Position numbers and translations under genes: made by a program. From positions 124,001 to 188,000 of the forward strand of contig OZ251231.1 in assembly GCA_965240325.2 (NCBI GenBank): a stretch of 64,000 bases of DNA, in the 5' to 3' direction. The notes beneath the pieces are model-generated. The model saw nothing but the letters and a program-made list of their open reading frames with translations. It had not been told where the DNA came from and did no database searches. The stretch's first letter is position 1; every line of letters begins with the position of its first letter. Positions 38,471-45,301 of this stretch are shown piece by piece. The DNA is from Rebecca billardiae RCC1528 (lineage: Eukaryota > Protista > Haptophyta).

Positions 38471-40633
38471 TCAGCGCCTGTTGCACGCCTGCTTGCTCGC
38501 CGAGATGGCGGCGCCGACCGCCAGGTCGCGCTGGAACTTCTGCTGGCTCGACTGCGCGGCGCGCTTGTCGTCCGAGGCCAGCTTGAACTCGATCGCGTCG
38601 ACCAGCGCCTTCCACGAGGCCTGCGGCCGGGCGGAGGGCCAGGCGGGAGGGCGCGGCCGGGGCGGCGGCGATCGGCGATCGGCGCGCGGTCGCGGCCGCG
38701 CCGACGCCTCCGCGCCTCCGCACCCCGCGCGGCGCGCATCGCGCATCGCGCGCGCGGCCCGGCTGCGCGCCGTGCCGCCCCTCTGAGCGCCCGCGCCCCC
38801 TCGCGCACCTCGATGATGTTGGTGCTCACGCCGATGGTCGAGAAGAGCGCGCCCGAGGCCTTGTCGGACGACTCGATGATCACGCGGATCGACGCGGCCG
38901 TCCCCGCCTCGGCGCCGTTCACGACGCGCACCTTGTAGTCGACGAGGTGCAGGTCGGCGAGCGTGGGGTACGCGTCGCGCAGCGCCTTGCGCAGCGACGC
39001 GTCGAGCGCGTCCACCGGCCCGTCCCCCTCGGCCACCTCGTGCCGCTCCGAGCCGTCCGGCAGCCGGACCTTCACCGTGGCCTCGGTCAGCTCGCGCGAG
39101 AGCTCGGAGGCGCACTCCGCCTCCTCGTGCGAGAGGCCCTCGATGTTCACGTTGTACCTGCGAGGCGCGCCGCGCGCGCGCGAGCGCGCGTGGGAGGGGG
39201 CGGGCGCGCGCGCGTGAGCGAGCCTGCCGGCCACGCCACGCCGGCCGGCCGGCGCGCGGCGCGCGGCGCGGCGCGCGGCGCGGCGCGCGGCGCTCGCGCG
39301 GCGCGCACTTGACGCGATGGAAGTGCGAGCAGAACTCGCCCGAGGCCTTGGAGACGAGGAGGTCGAAGGAGGCCTGCGCCGCCTCGAACTGGTACCCGAT
39401 GTTCTCCAGCCGCACCACCTCGCCGAGCACGCGCTTCGTCACCTCCGGGTCGGAGATGTCCTTGCCGGCCGTGAGCGCCGCAATGTTGGAGCGGCCCGAG
39501 AGCTCGGAGACGAGGATGCGGCGCGCGTTGCCGACCAGCTCGGGCGCGAGGTGCTCGTACGAGGTGGGCGCGAGCTGCATGGCGTGCGCGTGCATCCCGC
39601 CCTTGTGCGCGAACGCCGAGCGGCCGACGAACGGCTGCCCCGGCCGCGGCGTCAGGTTGGCCGTTTCATACACGAAGCGGCTCAGCTCGGTGAGGCCGTC
39701 AAAGCCGGCGCCGCGCGTGCAGCCGGCGAGCACGCGGTACCCGTCGCGCTTGAGGCCGAGGTTGGCGGCGATCGAGACGAGGTCGGCGTTGCCGCAGCGC
39801 TCGCCGATGCCGTTGATCGTGCCCTGCACCTGCGCCGCGCCCGCCTCCACCGCCGCGAGCGAGTTGGCGATCGCGAGGTCGCAGTCGTTGTGGCAGTGCA
39901 CGCCGACGCGCGCGCCCAGCTCCGAGACCGCGTCGAGCGCCGCGGCGGTGAGCCGGCCGATCTCCTCGGGCGAGGTGCCGCCGTTGGTGTCGCACAGCAC
40001 GATCGTCTCGGCGCCCGCCTCCGCCGCCGCGCGGATCGTCGCGCGCGCGTGCTCCTCGTTCGCCTTCCACCCGTCGAAGAAGTGCTCGGCATCGTACACG
40101 AGCCGCCGCCCCTGCGAGTGCAGGAACCCGACCGAGCCGCGGATCATGTCGATGTTCTCCTCGAGGGAGACGCGGAGGACGGCGGAGACGTGGAAGTCCC
40201 ACGTCTTGCCCACGATCGTGCACACCGGCGCCTCCGAGCGCAGCAGCGCCAGCATCCCCGGGTCCTCGGACGGCTCGACGCCGCGGCGGCGCGTCATGCC
40301 AAACGCGCACACCGCCGCGTGCCGCAGGTTGAGCGAGCGCACGCACTCGAAGAAGGCGACGTCCTTCTCGTTGGAGAGGGGGTAGCCGCCCTCGATGTAG
40401 TCGAACCCCATGTCGTCCAGCCGCTGCGCGATCTGCAGCTTGTCGTTCAGGCTGAGCGAGACGCCCTCGCCCTGCGTGCCGTCGCGCAGCGTCGTGTCGT
40501 ACAGCTCGATTGTGCGCGGCGACGGGCCGGAGCGCTCGGCGGCGGCGGCGGCGGCGGCGTTGAGCTCGCGCCGCGCCGCCTGGGCGAGCCAGCCGCGCGC
40601 CGCCCACCGCGCGCCGTGCCGCGTCGCGAGCAT
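38471..40633 (-). CDS. cimA: Citramalate synthase (bacterial-type CimA, DRE-TIM family); exons 40633-39309, 39157-38809, 38620-38471
   Basis: [116 protein letters not shown]|ASWKAL. Introns 39158-39308 and 38621-38808. Mitochondrial-like presequence. Confidence 0.85.
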
Positions 40634-40903
40634 CGCGCCGCGCGAGACGATGAACGTGGCCTTGGGCCGGCGGCGGTCGGCGTGCACGCGGTCTCGGTCG
40701 AAACCAAAACAAAATGGCCGGAGCGGCCGCGGCCTCGTGGTTTCTCACGGCGACTCCTCCCCTGGTCGACGCGGGTGGGTAAGCCGTCCAAACGTTTCCT
40801 ACGCGCGCGTTTCGTGGCTGGCACGTCGACGGTCCTGTTCCGCGCAAGGACGGCGCTCCGGCCCGTCCTGGCTGTGGCCACGCACCGCCGCCGCTCGTCA
40901 CTC
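40634..40903. promoter_or_regulatory. Putative bidirectional promoter shared by cimA and leuCD
   Basis: 270 bp between the two divergent ATGs, with A-rich tract AAACCAAAACAAAA at ~40701-40714. Confidence 0.55.
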
Positions 40904-43320
40904 ATGCTGGCGGCCGCGCTCTCGCGCGCCGCGCTGCGCTCACGCGCACGCGGCGTGGTCGTGCCGCTGGGCGCGGGCGCGCGCGCGCTCTCGAGCGGCG
41001 CGCCGCGCACCCTCTTCGACAAGATCTGGGACTCGAAGCTCGTCGACCAGCAGGACGACGGCACGTGCCTGATCTACATCGACCGCCACCTCGTGCACGA
41101 GGTCACGTCGCCGCAGGCGTTCGAGGGGCTGCGCAACGCGGGGCGGAAGGTGCGCCGGACGGACCGCGTGCTCGCGACCGCGGACCACAACGTGCCCACC
41201 TCCAACCGCGCCGGCGGCATCGAGAACCCCGAGTCCAAGGTGCAGGTCGACACGCTCGAGCAGAACTGCAAGGACTTCGGCCTCACCTACTTTGGCATGG
41301 ACGACGAGCGGCAGGGCGTGGTGCACATCATCGGGCCGGAGCAGGGGCTCACGCTGCCGGGGATGACGATCGTCTGCGGCGACTCGCACACCGCCACGCA
41401 CGGCGCGTTCGGCGCCCTCGCCTTCGGCATCGGCACCTCGGAGGTCGAGCACGTGCTCGCGACGCAGACGCTCGTGCAGCGGCCCGCCAAGAACATGCGC
41501 ATCAGCGTGGTGGGCGAGCTGCCGCTGGGCGTGACGTCGAAGGACCTGATCCTGCACACCATCGGCGTGATCGGCACCGCCGGCGGCACCGGCCACGTCA
41601 TCGAGTACGAGGGCCCTGCCATCTCGAAGCTCTCGATGGAGGTGGGCGCGCGCGGCTCCGCACTGCGAGCGCTCGCGCGCGCGCGCGCGCGCGCGCGCGC
41701 GCTCCGCGGCGGAGAGCGCGCCGGCCGCGCCGCGGCTGAGGCGCGCGTCTGCCCGCCGCGCGCGCGGCGCAGGCGCGGATGACCATCTGCAACATGTCCA
41801 TCGAGGCGGGCGCGCGCGCGGGCATGATTGCGCCCGACGACATCACGTTCGAGTACCTCAAGGGACGGCCGATGTCGCCCAAGGGCGCGCTGTGGGAGCA
41901 GGCGGTGGCCTACTGGCGCACGCTGCCGTCGGACGCGGGCGCAAAGTACGACACGGAGGTCACCATCAACGCCGCCGACATCGCGCCGCAGGTCACGTGG
42001 GGCACGTCGCCGCAGGACGTGCGGCCGATCACCGCGGCCGTCCCCGACCCCGCCGCCGAGCCCGACCCGTCGCGCCGCGCGGCGATCGAGCGCTCGCTCG
42101 AGTACATGGGTCTTCGCGCGGGGCAGCCGCTGAGTGAGGTGGCTGTGGACAAGGTCTTCATCGGCTCGTGCACCAACGGGCGGATCGAGGACCTCCGCGC
42201 CGTCGCCGAGGTGGCGCGCGGGCGCAAGGTCGCGGACAGCGTCGCGCACGCGCTGATCGTGCCGGGCTCGGGCATCGTCAAGAAGCAGGCGGAGGCGGAG
42301 GGGCTGCACGAGGTGTTCACCGCGGCGGGGTTTGACTGGCGCGAGCCGGGCTGCTCGATGTGCCTCGCAATGAACGAGGACAAGCTCGCGCCCGGCGAGC
42401 GCTGCGCGTCCACCTCCAACCGCAACTTTGAGGGGCGGCAAGGGCGCGGCGGGCGGACACACCTCGTCTCGCCCGCGATGGCGGCGGCGGCGGCGATCGC
42501 GGGGCGGCTCACGGACGTGCGCGCGCTCGGCGGCAGCCGCGGGCTGCACACGCGCGCGCGCCCGCTCTCGTCCGCCGCCGCGCCCGCCGCCGCCGGCGCC
42601 ATGCAGCCGTTCGTGCGCATGAGCGGCGTGCTCGCGCCGCTGCCGATCGCCAACGTGGACACGGACATGATCATCCCGAAGCAGTTCCTCAAGACGATCA
42701 AGCGCACGGGGCTGGGCAAGAACCTCTTTGACGAGATGCGCTACACCCCGGACGGGCAGGAGATTCCGAGCTTTGTGCTCAACCAGCCCGCGTACCGCGC
42801 GGCGACCATCCTCGTCTCGCGCGAGAACTTTGGGTGCGGCTCCTCGCGCGAGCACGCGCCGTGGGCGCTGCTCGACTTTGGCATCCGCGCGGTGATCGCG
42901 CCCTCGTTCGCCGACATCTTCTTCAACAACTGCTTCAAGAACGGCATCCTCCCCATCGTGCTGCCCAAGGTGCGCGCGCGACCGCGCCCCGCGCCGCCCG
43001 CGCGCGCGCGACCGCGCGCGCGCGCGACGCGCGACGTCGCTCGGCCGACCCCGCGCGCGCGCGCGACGCCTCGCGGCTGGCAGGACGTGTGCGAGGAGCT
43101 GCTCAGCGCGGCCACGGCGTCGCCGGGCACGGAGCTCACGATCGACCTGCCCTCGCAGGCGATCGAGCGCCCCTCCGGCTCGGCGATCAAGTTTGACGTG
43201 GAGGAGTTCCGCAAGCACTGCCTGCTCAACGGCCTCGACGACATCGGGCTCACGCTGCAGAAGGCGGACAAGATCGACACGTACGAGAAGAAGCAGAAGG
43301 AGCTCTACCCGTGGCTGTGA
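40904..43320 (+). CDS. leuCD: 3-isopropylmalate dehydratase/isomerase, fused LeuC+LeuD; exons 40904-41641, 41773-42969, 43084-43320
   Basis: LeuC: [64 protein letters not shown]. LeuD: [56 protein letters not shown]. Introns 41642-41772 and 42970-43083. Confidence 0.95.
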
Positions 43321-43885: not shown

Positions 43886-45301
43886 ATGTCGACGGTGTTC
43901 GAACGTTGGCAGAGCGCGCACGACAAGGGCGAGGTGTGGAGCGCACCGGTACACGAGGGCGGTGCGTCGAGCTTCTCCGAGAACTATGAGCTCCAGGAGC
44001 TGCTCGGTCACGGCGCCTTCGGCGAGGTGCACCGCGCGAAGCACCGCGCGACCGGCAAGGCGGTGGCCGTCAAGATCATCGCCATCCCGGGCGACGTGAA
44101 AGGCAGCGAGCGGAGCGCGTACGAGGCAAACGTGCGCAAGGAGATGGCGCTCCTGTGCAAGATGTCCCACCCGCACATCATCTCCGTCATTGAGGCGTTC
44201 GCGCCGCCCTCGGAGAAGGGCGGCGTCGCCGCGCAGCCGAGCCCGGCCAAGCCGATTCGCAGCAAGAACGACCTCGAGCTCACGTGGCGCGTGGTGCTCG
44301 AGCTGTGCATGGGGCACGAGCTGCAGTCGATCCTCGACGCGCATGGCGCGCTCGACGTGGAGGACGTGCGCGTGATCGCCGCGCAGCTCGTCTCGGCCGT
44401 GCACCACATGCACGAGAATGGCGGTGCGCGCCGGCCGCGCGTCGCGCGCGCCGCGGAGACGCGCAGCCCTCTCACCGCGCGCGACGCGGTGCGCCCCGCG
44501 CGTCTCCCGCCCGCAGTCGTGCACCGCGACATCAAGCCGGCCAACGTGATGGTCCTCGACGGCGCGCTCGACGGCCCGAACACGCGAATCAAGATCCTCG
44601 ACTTTGGGCTGGCGCACGGGCTGGACGAGCAGTTTGTGCAGCTCTACAGGGACGTGGCGGTGCGCCGCGCGTCGCAGGCGGGCACCGGCGTGATGAAGGG
44701 CGCGAGCAGGGGCAAGGCGGTCGCCCGCGCCGTGGCGGGGTCCAGGCGCGCCGTCCCCTCCGCCGAGGAGAAGATCGAGGAGTCGCACGCCGAGTCCGGC
44801 AGCACCAAGCACCGCATGAGCGTGCCAGAGGTGCAGCTCAACCCGTCTCGGTTCTCGTTTGCGGTCGAGCCCGCAGGCTCGCGGATGTACGCCGCGCCCG
44901 AGATCCAGGACTACCACCGGTACAAGCAGAAGGACGGCGCGGCGGGCGGGCTCGTCGTCGCCACCACCGTCGTCGTCGACGCGTACTCCGTCGGCGCGGT
45001 GCTCCGCCACCTGCTCACCGGCGTGCCGCCCGACCGCGTCGTGCGAGACTTCATCAGCCAGCAGCGGGCGAGCCCGATCGAGTGGCTGATCCGAGTGGTG
45101 AAGGCGTGCGCGGGCAAGCCGGTCGTGCACTACCGCTACCTGAGCGAGCTGCCGGAGGGCGTCGCCGACTTGCTCAGCGGGCTGCTCGACCCGTCGCCGC
45201 GGAAGCGCACGACCATCACGCAGCTGTGCGATCACCCGTGGATCCGAGGCGCCCCTGGCGCCGACGCGCTGCCCTTCCCTCCTCTGCCCCAGCGATCGTA
45301 G
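43886..45301 (+). CDS. Ser/Thr protein kinase; intron 44424-44516
   Basis: LGHGAFGEV, VAVK, HRDIKPAN, DFG, YAAPE, DAYSVG, R..ITQLCDHPW. Confidence 0.92.
   Translation: MSTVFERWQSAHDKGEVWSAPVHEGGASSFSENYELQELLGHGAFGEVHRAKHRATGKAVAVKIIAIPGDVKGSERSAYEANVRKEMALLCKMSHPHIISVIEAFAPPSEKGGVAAQPSPAKPIRSKNDLELTWRVVLELCMGHELQSILDAHGALDVEDVRVIAAQLVSAVHHMHENGGARRPRVARAAETRSPLTARDAVRPARLPPAVVHRDIKPANVMVLDGALDGPNTRIKILDFGLAHGLDEQFVQLYRDVAVRRASQAGTGVMKGASRGKAVARAVAGSRRAVPSAEEKIEESHAESGSTKHRMSVPEVQLNPSRFSFAVEPAGSRMYAAPEIQDYHRYKQKDGAAGGLVVATTVVVDAYSVGAVLRHLLTGVPPDRVVRDFISQQRASPIEWLIRVVKACAGKPVVHYRYLSELPEGVADLLSGLLDPSPRKRTTITQLCDHPWIRGAPGADALPFPPLPQRS

What the first reader, a model, noticed from the sequence alone, without database searches (positions are those of the whole stretch)
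42517..42606. LeuC-LeuD linker looks like an internal mitochondrial presequence (cleavable polyprotein?)
Seen: between the LeuC end (LTDVR) and the LeuD start (MQPF, ATG at 42601) the linker is [26 protein letters not shown]. It is Arg/Ser/Ala-rich with no acidic residues. It contains R-x-L-H and R-x-L-S-S, echoing the RALSS cleavage-like motif of the same protein's N-terminal presequence. Known: mitochondrial processing peptidase can cut internal presequence-like linkers of tandem precursors (e.g. yeast Arg5,6). Inference: two formerly separately targeted genes fused and are imported 1:1, then processed into a bacterial-like heterodimer.
Basis: partly seen in the sequence, partly recalled or inferred. 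Interest (0 to 1): 0.7.

Follow-up and report, generated by a model that had tools for sequence, protein, structure and literature searches.

The report
Likely cleavable linker in leucine enzyme
In this alga's leucine-pathway enzyme, two formerly separate bacterial subunits are joined by a short spacer that looks like a second mitochondrial import signal with a conserved cutting motif. The protein is therefore probably imported into mitochondria as one chain and then cut in two, a known trick not yet described for this enzyme.

Summary
A three-exon gene (40904-43320, + strand) encodes a 723-aa LeuC-LeuD isopropylmalate isomerase. Residues 497-522 (nt 42523-42600) are an acid-free Arg/Ser/Ala linker carrying RGLHT and RPLSS, echoing RALSS in the N-terminal presequence.

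The intron reading fails. The linker is conserved as protein in two close relatives. A relative's transcripts that have spliced the two shared introns still keep it. Neither relative has an AG at the would-be acceptor. No RNA data exist for this organism, so rare alternative splicing remains open.

The cleavage reading gains strong comparative support:
- All 24 distinct fusions of the mitochondrial type have an aligned R-x-[FYLM]-[SHGA]-[ST] motif just after the LeuC end, with invariant Arg.
- Shuffling predicts 2.5 R-3 motifs in 20 linkers; 20 were observed.
- None occurs in 58 acidic linkers of cytosolic or plastid-type fusions.
- These proteins also lack the C-terminal tail typical of cytosolic Leu1.

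The Met at 42601 aligns exactly with the bacterial LeuD start.

Cleavage itself is unproven. This would be a new member of the Arg5,6-type composite precursors. The claim that two separately targeted genes fused is not supported; co-transfer of an adjacent leuC-leuD pair fits as well. The scan has one similar unchecked note elsewhere in this genome.

The parts
40904..43320 (+). LeuC-LeuD fused 3-isopropylmalate dehydratase gene. Exons 40904-41641, 41773-42969 and 43084-43320 (stop included). The product is 723 aa, 77 kDa.
   Evidence: The spliced protein aligns end to end with P0002, with 83% identity over the compared columns.
40904..40996 (+). N-terminal presequence, aa 1-31. It is acid-free with 5 Arg and ends in the R-3-type motif R-A-L-S-S. 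It sits directly upstream of the position where bacterial LeuC starts ([12 protein letters not shown]).
41642..41772 (+). Intron 1, 131 nt, GTGGGCGCGC...GCAG.
   Evidence: The same position is split in L002 and retained in the relative's transcript isoforms P0121 and P0125.
42511..42522 (+). End of the LeuC domain, T-D-V-R. D and R are invariant in the 49-sequence alignment of eukaryotic fusions. The sampled bacterial LeuC have D-V-R and stop 3-4 residues later.
42523..42600 (+). Linker, aa 497-522. It is acid-free and Ala/Arg/Ser-rich. AlphaFold2 predicts the homologous linker of the close relative P0002 to be disordered. The part with no bacterial counterpart is about aa 501-522.
42535..42552 (+). 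Motif 1, S-R-G-L-H-T (aa 501-506). This is the window's copy of the R-x-[FYLM]-[SHGA]-[ST] element aligned in 24 of 24 mitochondrial-type fusions. It is the proposed primary MPP site, R-G|L-H-T under the R-2 rule.
   Evidence: RGLHT is identical in P0002 and P0011.
42556..42573 (+). Motif 2, A-R-P-L-S-S (aa 508-513), a second R-3-type motif. It is present as RALSA in P0002 and absent in P0011. It is a possible second cut that would trim the new LeuD N-terminus.
42601..42603 (+). Relic LeuD initiator Met (Met523). It lies 17 residues before N-V-D-T-D, the same offset as Met1 in 119 of 120 stand-alone alphaproteobacterial-type LeuD proteins.
42970..43083 (+). Intron 2, 114 nt, in frame and without a stop, GTGCGCGCGC...GCAG.
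   Evidence: The same position is read through in L002/P0011 and retained in the relative's isoform P0122.
38471..40687 (-). Context: a divergently transcribed LeuA/CimA-like (HMGL-like) gene with its own basic N-terminus. The same head-to-head pair is present in a relative's genomic contig, L002.

Best explanation
The 26-residue stretch is a translated, flexible spacer between the LeuC and LeuD halves of a mitochondrially targeted isopropylmalate isomerase. It fills the gap between the ancestral LeuC stop and the ancestral LeuD start.

It acts as an internal presequence-like signal. After import through the N-terminal presequence, the mitochondrial processing peptidase cuts at the conserved R-x-hydrophobic-[S/H]-[S/T] motif (here R502-G|L-H-T) and possibly again at R509-P-L|S-S. 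This would release a LeuC of about 51 kDa and a LeuD of about 23 kDa, close to the bacterial subunits, in 1:1 amounts.

Shown here: the linker is coding, its relative's counterpart is predicted to be disordered, it has presequence-like composition, and the motif is conserved and confined to the mitochondrial type. Inferred: mitochondrial location, the cut itself, and which site is used.
For: 1. The linker is coding.
- The protein-level motifs G-x-R-G-L-H-T and A-G-A-M-x-P-F are shared with P0002 and P0011.
- P0002 belongs to a cluster of MMETSP transcripts. Its isoforms retain intron 1 or intron 2, so that species shares both introns. The fully spliced form and all other isoforms keep the linker.
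- The would-be acceptor AG is absent in L001 and L002.
- The would-be donor GT is the Val codon of the D-V-R that closes LeuC.
- GC3 of the linker is 30/30, like exons (0.97) and unlike the flat 0.89 of introns.

2. The linker is presequence-like.
- The two top-scoring windows of the protein are the N-terminus and the linker, and the linker lies in the longest acid-free run.
- In the AlphaFold2 model of P0002, the only segments with pLDDT below 50 are 1-28 and 503-528.

3. The motif is conserved and specific.
- The a-priori R-3 motif R-x-[FYL]-[SA] occurs 20 times in 20 linkers, against 2.5 after shuffling (0 of 5000 shuffles reach 20). That is 25 times its density in the mature domains. It occurs 0 times in 58 acidic linkers.
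- The first motif aligns in 24 of 24 sequences with an invariant Arg, while the rest of the linker varies from 15 to 49 aa.
- The same proteins' N-termini usually end in the same kind of motif.

4. There is an independent sign of organellar location.
- 23 of 24 end at P-W-[LI] with no tail, and none has the cytosolic CIA tripeptide.
- 112 of 114 acidic-linker fusions have a tail, and 44 have the strict tripeptide (rule from PMC10623007).

5. There is a precedent. Arg5,6, Atp25 and others are cut by MPP at an internal presequence-like junction that follows the R-2 rule (PMC8734313).

6. There is a parallel case. P0139 is a LeuB-LeuC-LeuD fusion whose LeuB-LeuC junction is the old LeuCD presequence, with R-R-G-M-A-T-S just before PQTLFDK.
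Against: - No experiment or proteomic datum shows two polypeptides.
- TargetP, MitoFates and iMLP could not be run.
- The Euglena mitochondrial proteome reports only isopropylmalate synthase of this pathway (PMC7403612).
- Cleavage is not structurally required. Bacterial fusions work with a 6-aa linker, and fungal Leu1 stays in one piece.
- All motif-bearing linkers descend from one ancestral form. The link with targeting is therefore one evolutionary event, and only the persistence of the motif argues for function.
- The window's first motif has His at P2' and the second has Pro at P2 (or at P1 under the R-2 register), which are less typical.
- The second motif is missing in P0011.
- Internal MPP sites also depend on distant features of the precursor (PMC8734313).
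Confidence: 0.55

Rival explanations
1. The fusion is imported into mitochondria but stays in one piece. The basic, acid-free linker serves as an internal targeting-signal-like element that helps import of a long precursor (Tom70 binding, membrane-potential pull), or is simply a flexible tether. The motif is kept for receptor or chaperone binding, not for cutting.
For: Internal presequence-like segments that aid import without cleavage are documented (PMC5881500, listed). Single-chain LeuCD is active in fungi and in the bacterial fusion P0158. Linkers of 15-16 aa (P0089, P0139) can easily span the gap.
Against: General import-assisting segments need composition, not a fixed motif. Here an Arg and a hydrophobic residue two places later are fixed in 24/24 and 23/24 sequences, in exactly the MPP R-2/R-3 register, while everything else drifts. 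The motif mirrors each protein's own N-terminal cleavage motif.
Confidence: 0.25
2. The linker is a functionless relic, either a former LeuD presequence or a translated leuC-leuD spacer. Its composition reflects mutational bias or lack of constraint.
For: The middle of the linker varies freely in length and sequence. The window's genome is 69% GC, which favours Ala, Arg and Gly.
Against: The motif persists in chlorarachniophytes, labyrinthulomycetes, a euglenid and the window's lineage (taxa; alignment). It also persists in linkers rich in Lys, Asn and Phe, whose composition does not look GC-driven (for example P0004). It is 8-fold over the shuffle expectation. Acidic residues are absent or nearly so in 24 linkers, while the mature domains carry 11.5% D+E.
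Confidence: 0.08
3. 42517-42606 is an intron or an alternatively spliced in-frame segment. Its removal would give a linker-less fusion joined as ...RLTD|PFVR...
For: The first 10 nt equal the donor of intron 2 (GTGCGCGCGC). That 10-mer is enriched in the window, 24 matches against 8.3 expected. The segment ends GCAG like both real introns, and its 90-nt length is similar to theirs. No RNA data exist for this organism.
Against: The linker is kept in all six transcript isoforms of the nearest relative, including the fully spliced one. There is no AG at the homologous place in L001 or L002, and the donor match falls to 6/10 in L002. Splicing would delete the Val and Arg of the D-V-R that closes LeuC, and the relic Met. 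Six of the ten donor bases are forced by Val-Arg codons under the gene's GC3 bias. The linker shows exon-like codon-position GC.
Confidence: 0.05
4. The R-x-x-S/T motif is a basophilic-kinase phosphorylation or docking site that regulates the enzyme.
For: Several copies read R-R-x-S or R-x-x-S.
Against: The hydrophobic residue at +2 is not part of those kinase consensus sites, yet it is conserved. The same motif closes the N-terminal presequences of the same proteins, where it is the classical processing site. The window's own first motif has His, not Ser, at +3.
Confidence: 0.04

Closest known systems
Arg5,6 (yeast) / arg-6 (Neurospora) composite mitochondrial precursor. Also Atp25, Etp1, Rsm22-Cox11 and rice SDHB-RPS14 (PMC8734313).
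   Same: Two enzyme parts of one pathway or complex sit on one precursor with an N-terminal presequence. A presequence-like segment sits exactly at the junction and carries an R-2/R-3 motif. The junction signal is conserved across fusion homologues, and the tandem form correlates with mitochondrial location.
   Different: Here the two parts are subunits of a single Fe-S enzyme rather than consecutive enzymes. The lineages are protists and algae rather than fungi or plants. Many members have two motifs in the linker. Cleavage has not been demonstrated. LeuCD is not among the listed cases.
Fungal Leu1, the cytosolic single-chain isopropylmalate isomerase.
   Same: It has the same LeuC-linker-LeuD architecture and common descent. 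Eukaryotic fusions form one clade next to alphaproteobacterial LeuC.
   Different: Leu1 has no N-terminal presequence, a 40-64 aa acidic linker without the motif, and a C-terminal tail ending in the CIA tripeptide. The window protein has the opposite state for all three features.
Bacterial LeuC/LeuD heterodimer and the bacterial leuCD fusion (P0158 in L004).
   Same: Identity is 74-77% for LeuC (measured with P0101 as query) and 69-76% for LeuD (measured with P0002) against alphaproteobacterial proteins. The domain ends and the LeuD start Met align exactly. The proposed products would mimic the heterodimer.
   Different: Bacteria have no presequence. The bacterial fusion has a 6-aa linker with no motif.
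Internal matrix-targeting-signal-like sequences (iMTS-L; PMC5881500).
   Same: An internal segment with presequence composition inside a mitochondrial precursor.
   Different: iMTS-Ls are scattered, are not tied to a domain junction, and are not defined by a conserved cleavage motif.

Membership tests
Composite mitochondrial precursor with an internal MPP site (Arg5,6 type) | N-terminal matrix-targeting presequence | tested here: inconclusive
   Residues 1-31 are acid-free with 5 Arg and end in R-A-L-S-S. This is the top-scoring window in a home-made composition profile, and it sits exactly upstream of the bacterial LeuC start. TargetP and MitoFates were not available and there are no localisation data.
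Composite mitochondrial precursor with an internal MPP site (Arg5,6 type) | Presequence-like segment exactly at the junction of the two parts | tested here: met
   The second-best composition window of the whole protein is aa 501-520. The longest acid-free run is aa 495-541. The homologous segment of P0002 is predicted to be disordered. The segment lies between the ancestral LeuC end and the LeuD start.
Composite mitochondrial precursor with an internal MPP site (Arg5,6 type) | MPP consensus (R-2/R-3) motif at the junction | tested here: met
   R-G-L-H-T (aa 502-506) and R-P-L-S-S (aa 509-513) are present. The R-3 motif occurs 20 times in 20 related linkers against 2.5 expected.
Composite mitochondrial precursor with an internal MPP site (Arg5,6 type) | Junction signal conserved among fusion homologues and tied to mitochondrial location | tested here: met
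   The motif aligns in 24 of 24 mitochondrial-type fusions and is absent from acidic-linker fusions. It co-occurs with short basic N-extensions and with the lack of a CIA tail. Caveat: this is one evolutionary origin.
Composite mitochondrial precursor with an internal MPP site (Arg5,6 type) | Precursor is actually cut by MPP into two stable polypeptides | not testable with these tools
   This needs a western blot, N-terminomics or an in vitro MPP assay. No proteomic evidence was found.
Eukaryotic fused isopropylmalate isomerase (aconitase superfamily) | Aconitase plus Aconitase_C domains in LeuC-to-LeuD order, with the cluster cysteines | tested here: met
   Pfam E-values are 7e-75 and 9e-97 (Aconitase) and 5.5e-40 (Aconitase_C). 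G-S-C-T-N-G-R and G-C-S-M-C are present and invariant in the alignment.
Cytosolic Leu1-type CIA client | C-terminal tail ending in [LIM]-[DES]-[WF] | tested here: not met
   The protein ends ...L-Y-P-W-L with no tail. The rule comes from PMC10623007.
Spliceosomal intron (for 42517-42606) | GT...AG boundaries that match the genome's consensus | tested here: met
   GTGCGCGCGC...GCAG. The donor 10-mer is identical to that of intron 2.
Spliceosomal intron (for 42517-42606) | Absent from mature mRNA and not conserved as protein | tested here: not met
   This was tested in relatives only. The linker is kept in all transcript isoforms of the nearest relative and is conserved as protein in two relatives, which lack the acceptor AG. 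The organism's own RNA was not available.

The most novel reading that the evidence does not exclude
The ancestral eukaryotic isopropylmalate isomerase was already a mitochondrial composite precursor: alphaproteobacterial LeuC, a presequence-like spacer with an MPP site, then LeuD. That design survives in euglenids, chlorarachniophytes, labyrinthulomycetes and this alga. Fungal cytosolic Leu1 and the plastid forms would be later derivatives that lost the presequence, replaced the linker with an acidic one and gained a CIA tail. This would make LeuCD the oldest and most widespread MPP-cut polyprotein, and the first in which the cut separates the subunits of one Fe-S enzyme.
Probability: 0.3. 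Interest if true: 0.75.

Novelty: new member of a known kind. Interest (0 to 1): 0.6.

Why it matters
Only a handful of composite mitochondrial precursors cut internally by MPP are known, almost all from fungi (PMC8734313). A conserved case in several protist and algal lineages, in an iron-sulfur enzyme of amino-acid synthesis, would matter in three ways:
- It would show that internal MPP processing is an old and general way to import subunits in equal amounts.
- It would give a simple sequence signature (basic linker with R-x-hydrophobic-S/T, no C-terminal CIA tail) for telling mitochondrial from cytosolic or plastid leucine synthesis in algae.
- It would offer a natural linker for stoichiometric delivery of two proteins to mitochondria, an approach already being engineered (PMC10450427, listed).

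It also bears on where leucine is made in algae with secondary plastids.

Tried and rejected
- RNA evidence for this organism. Both run searches failed: none was listed for RNA, and only noise-level word shares of 0.05-0.07 appeared in soil and sludge metagenomes. Read laying was therefore not used. The only other contig carrying the gene (L005) is genomic.
- Intron reading. Considered seriously because the donor matches the consensus 10/10. Rejected on the relative's transcripts and on conservation.
- Codon-position GC and (GC)n content. These give only mild support for a coding linker.
- A phylogenetically independent test of linker type against targeting. This was not possible. All basic linkers trace to one group or grade, so I relied on persistence of the motif within the group.
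- Monophyly of the mitochondrial type. It was found in 0 of 200 bootstrap trees, but the AU test gives p = 0.08, so 'ancestral' remains only suggested.
- Search for a stand-alone eukaryotic LeuD with its own presequence. None appeared among the top 120 hits, which are alphaproteobacterial-type proteins of 201-208 aa. This is not exhaustive.
- Literature. No paper was found that describes cleavage of LeuCD. The Euglena mitoproteome was uninformative.
- The large representative search, fold searches and Rfam were not used because they were not needed.
Full report
**What is there.** The window is 69% G+C. On the + strand a three-exon gene runs from the ATG at 40904 to the stop at 43318-43320. Its exons are 40904-41641, 41773-42969 and 43084-43320. 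Two short GC-rich introns interrupt it: 41642-41772 (131 nt) and 42970-43083 (114 nt, in frame and without a stop). The 723-aa product has Pfam Aconitase followed by Aconitase_C and the cluster-binding cysteine motifs. It is a LeuC-LeuD fused 3-isopropylmalate dehydratase.

- LeuC ends at T-D-V-R (aa 493-496, nt 42511-42522).
- The 26 residues from A497 to A522 (nt 42523-42600) contain no Asp or Glu.
- They contain R-G-L-H (aa 502-505) and R-P-L-S-S (aa 509-513).
- The ATG at 42601 encodes Met523, followed by Q-P-F.
- The N-terminus contains R-A-L-S-S (aa 27-31).

The stretch 42517-42606 begins with GTGCGCGCGC, identical to the first ten bases of the second intron. That 10-mer is enriched in the window (24 matches against 8.3 expected). 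The stretch ends GCAG like both real introns. Four lines of evidence argue against an intron.

1. The nearest full-length relative, P0002, sits on a 2819-nt contig with an uninterrupted 730-aa frame. It is 74% identical to the query that still contained intron 2, and 83% over the compared columns. Its 90% cluster holds MMETSP transcripts. Some isoforms begin just after the intron-1 position and one reads into the intron-2 position. That species therefore shares both introns, and every isoform, including the fully spliced one, keeps the linker.
2. The linker is conserved as protein in P0002 and in P0011, which comes from the genomic contig L002 with the same two introns and the same divergent neighbour gene. 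The shared elements are G-x-R-G-L-H-T near the start and G-[AG]-M-x-P-F at the end. The linker lengths of 27, 33 and 32 residues all preserve the frame.
3. Neither relative has an AG where the window has its 'acceptor' (ATGCAG|CCG against ATGACGCCG and ATGGCTCCG). The 'donor' GT is the Val codon of the D-V-R that closes LeuC, in which D and R are invariant among the 49 aligned eukaryotic fusions and which the sampled bacterial LeuC also carry.
4. The linker's third codon positions are 30/30 G or C. Exons show 0.97, while the introns are flat at about 0.89.

No RNA data could be found for the organism itself. One search listed none. One search listed only 5-7% word shares in soil and sludge metagenomes. 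The only other contig with the gene is genomic. Read laying was therefore not used. I put constitutive or alternative splicing at about 5%.

**What the linker is.** Alphaproteobacterial stand-alone LeuC proteins are 74-77% identical to the LeuC part of a related fusion (P0101 as query) and stop three or four residues after D-V-R. Stand-alone LeuD proteins are 69-76% identical to the LeuD part of P0002. They start M-[TDE]-[PK]-F, with N-x-D-T-D at offset 17 from Met1 in 119 of 120 cases. Met523 has the same offset. So the ATG at 42601 is the relic LeuD start codon. The segment with no bacterial counterpart is about aa 501-522, which is exactly the part that carries the two motifs. In the same way, the N-terminal 31 residues sit directly upstream of the bacterial LeuC start (M-A-x-P-R-T-L-F-D-K against the window's [10 protein letters not shown]).

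I built a log-odds composition score from the N-terminal extensions of 14 more distant homologues against their mature domains. With it, the two best 20-residue windows of the whole protein are 1-20 and 501-520. The longest acid-free run is aa 495-541. An AlphaFold2 model of P0002 (mean pLDDT 82.5) has only two segments with pLDDT below 50: the N-terminal 28 residues and residues 503-528 of the linker.

**The comparative pattern.** LeuC-LeuD fusions are widespread in eukaryotes. Among the distinct fusions recovered, the linkers fall into two sharply different kinds.

- **Basic kind.** This includes the window, P0002, P0011, Eutreptiella (P0003), Amorphochlora and Bigelowiella (P0012, P0130), Thraustochytrium, Aplanochytrium and Hondaea (P0014, P0015, P0078; taxa), and several unnamed transcripts. 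These linkers are 15-49 residues long, have no or almost no acidic residues, and are rich in Arg, Ser and Thr.
- **Acidic kind.** This includes fungi, Micromonas and other green algae, cryptophyte-like and ochrophyte-like sequences with signal peptides or long extensions, and many others. These linkers are mostly 38-64 residues long and acidic.

In an alignment of the 24 basic linkers, one element lines up in every sequence a few residues after D-V-R. It consists of an invariant Arg, any residue, F/Y/L/M (one exception), then S/H/G/A, then T/S (one N). About half of the sequences have a second copy 7-25 residues further on. Everything else is unalignable.

The classical R-3 processing motif R-x-[FYL]-[SA], fixed before counting, occurs 20 times in 20 such linkers. 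Shuffling each linker gives 2.5 on average, and 0 of 5000 shuffles reach 20. That density is 25 times the density in the mature domains of the same proteins. The motif occurs zero times in 58 acidic linkers.

The N-terminal extensions of the same proteins are 17-37 residues long, acid-free, and usually end in the same kind of motif a few residues before T-L-F-D-K.

There is also an independent marker. Cytosolic Fe-S clients such as fungal Leu1 carry a C-terminal tail ending in [LIM]-[DES]-[WF], which organellar and bacterial orthologues lack (PMC10623007). Of 24 basic-linker fusions, 23 end at P-W-[LI] with no tail at all and none has the tripeptide. Of 114 acidic-linker fusions, 112 have a tail and 44 have the strict tripeptide.

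**Phylogeny.** With linkers and N-extensions masked, all basic-linker proteins lie on one side of a well-supported branch. In LeuC-only trees rooted with alphaproteobacterial LeuC:
- The eukaryotic fusions form one clade.
- The split (basic type plus bacteria | acidic type) has 100/100 support.
- The basic type is a grade, monophyletic in 0 of 200 bootstrap trees.
- An AU test does not quite reject forcing it together (p = 0.082).

Two consequences follow. First, the association between linker type and targeting is a single historical event, so it is not statistical proof. The argument for function rests on the motif persisting while the rest of the linker has diverged beyond recognition across very distant lineages. 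Second, the mitochondrial type may be the ancestral eukaryotic state, but this is only suggested.

**Mechanism proposed.** The precursor (77 kDa) is imported through its N-terminal presequence. MPP removes that presequence at R-A-L|S-S, or at R-A|L-S-S followed by Icp55-type trimming. MPP also cuts the flexible junction at R502-G|L-H-T, and possibly again at R509-P-L|S-S. This would yield a LeuC whose C-terminus is only a few residues longer than the bacterial one, and a LeuD of about 23 kDa that starts a few residues before the ancestral Met.

This is what MPP does to Arg5,6. In that case the internal site lies in a presequence-like segment at the junction and follows the R-2 rule. It is conserved among fusion homologues and goes with mitochondrial location (PMC8734313). 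LeuCD is not in that paper's list of composite precursors, and I found no paper describing it.

A parallel case was found in passing. P0139, on a gene-dense Logan contig (L003), is a LeuB-LeuC-LeuD fusion. Its LeuB-LeuC junction is plainly the former LeuCD presequence (R-R-G-M-A-T-S... then P-Q-T-L-F-D-K). Its LeuC-LeuD linker carries R-R-S-L-H-T-S, and its own N-terminus carries R-Q-L-H-A-S. This shows that presequences do become internal linkers in this family. It also shows that R-x-L-H-[TA], the window's variant, is used at N-termini.

**What remains open.**
- Cleavage is inferred, not shown.
- It is not needed for geometry. A bacterial leuCD fusion in a trmD-rplS-leuCD-leuB operon (L004) has a 6-residue linker, and fungal Leu1 works uncut.
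- The main rival is therefore an uncut fusion whose linker assists import or merely tethers (about 25%). The fixed register of Arg and the hydrophobic residue is hard to explain that way.
- The Euglena mitochondrial proteome lists only isopropylmalate synthase of this pathway, which neither helps nor hurts.
- Targeting predictors were not available, so 'mitochondrial' rests on the length and composition of the extension, the lack of a hydrophobic signal-peptide core, the motif, and the missing CIA tail.

The claim was that two separately targeted genes fused. It is not supported:
- No presequence-bearing stand-alone LeuD turned up among the top 120 LeuD-only hits (not exhaustive).
- Both halves are alphaproteobacterial.
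- The order C-to-D is the operon order.
- A bacterial fusion exists.

Read-through of a co-transferred adjacent pair, with the spacer later shaped into a processing site, fits at least as well. The data cannot decide between the two.

**Verdict.** This is most likely a composite mitochondrial precursor of the Arg5,6 kind, which makes it a new member of a known kind, conserved in several protist and algal lineages and possibly ancestral. Another agent's note calls this genome a GC-rich haptophyte (unchecked). One further unchecked note (s1-372074) reports a second fusion with a presequence-like linker elsewhere in the genome.

Noticed in passing
L003:1752-5006 (protein P0139): A LeuB-LeuC-LeuD triple fusion of 1084 aa on a gene-dense Logan contig. 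All three junction or N-terminal segments are acid-poor and carry R-x-[LM]-[HA]-[ST]-type motifs. The LeuB-LeuC junction looks like the former LeuCD presequence. The organism is unknown.
   Followed up: partly
window 38471-40687 (-) with 40904-43320 (+); L002:2995-4716 (-) with L002:4872-7493 (+): The head-to-head pair of a LeuA/CimA-like (HMGL-like) gene and the LeuCD fusion is conserved in a relative's genomic contig, with both LeuCD introns at the same places. The upstream gene also has a basic N-terminus.
   Followed up: partly
L004:6001-8010: A bacterial leuC-leuD fusion (669 aa, only 6 linker residues) in a trmD-rplS-leuCD-leuB operon. It shows that the two halves can be joined almost directly.
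   Followed up: partly
window, 24 sites (for example 42970, 42517, 4610, 5119): GTGCGCGCGC occurs 24 times against 8.3 expected. It matches the 5' end of the gene's second intron (intron 1 starts GTGGGCGCGC) and may be the genome's preferred donor context. The introns themselves are about half (GC)n runs.
   Followed up: no
proteins P0217-P0237 and P0238-P0357 against the fusions: Eukaryotic fused LeuCD is strikingly close to alphaproteobacterial LeuC (74-77% identity, P0101 as query) and LeuD (69-76%, P0002 as query). Branches between them are very short, consistent with a mitochondrial-endosymbiont origin of the whole eukaryotic family, fungal Leu1 included.
   Followed up: partly
acidic-linker fusions (for example P0030, P0081, P0053): Cytosolic and plastid-type linkers carry their own conserved short elements (S-K-x-[FY]-L, W-[ES]-[ED]-F-[VL]-G, or T-L-P-K-x-[ED]-Y). 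These may dock on the enzyme surface. Their role was not examined.
   Followed up: no
window 43886-45301 (+): The next gene downstream is a protein kinase (Pkinase domain according to the gene calls on L005). It is unrelated to the finding.
   Followed up: no
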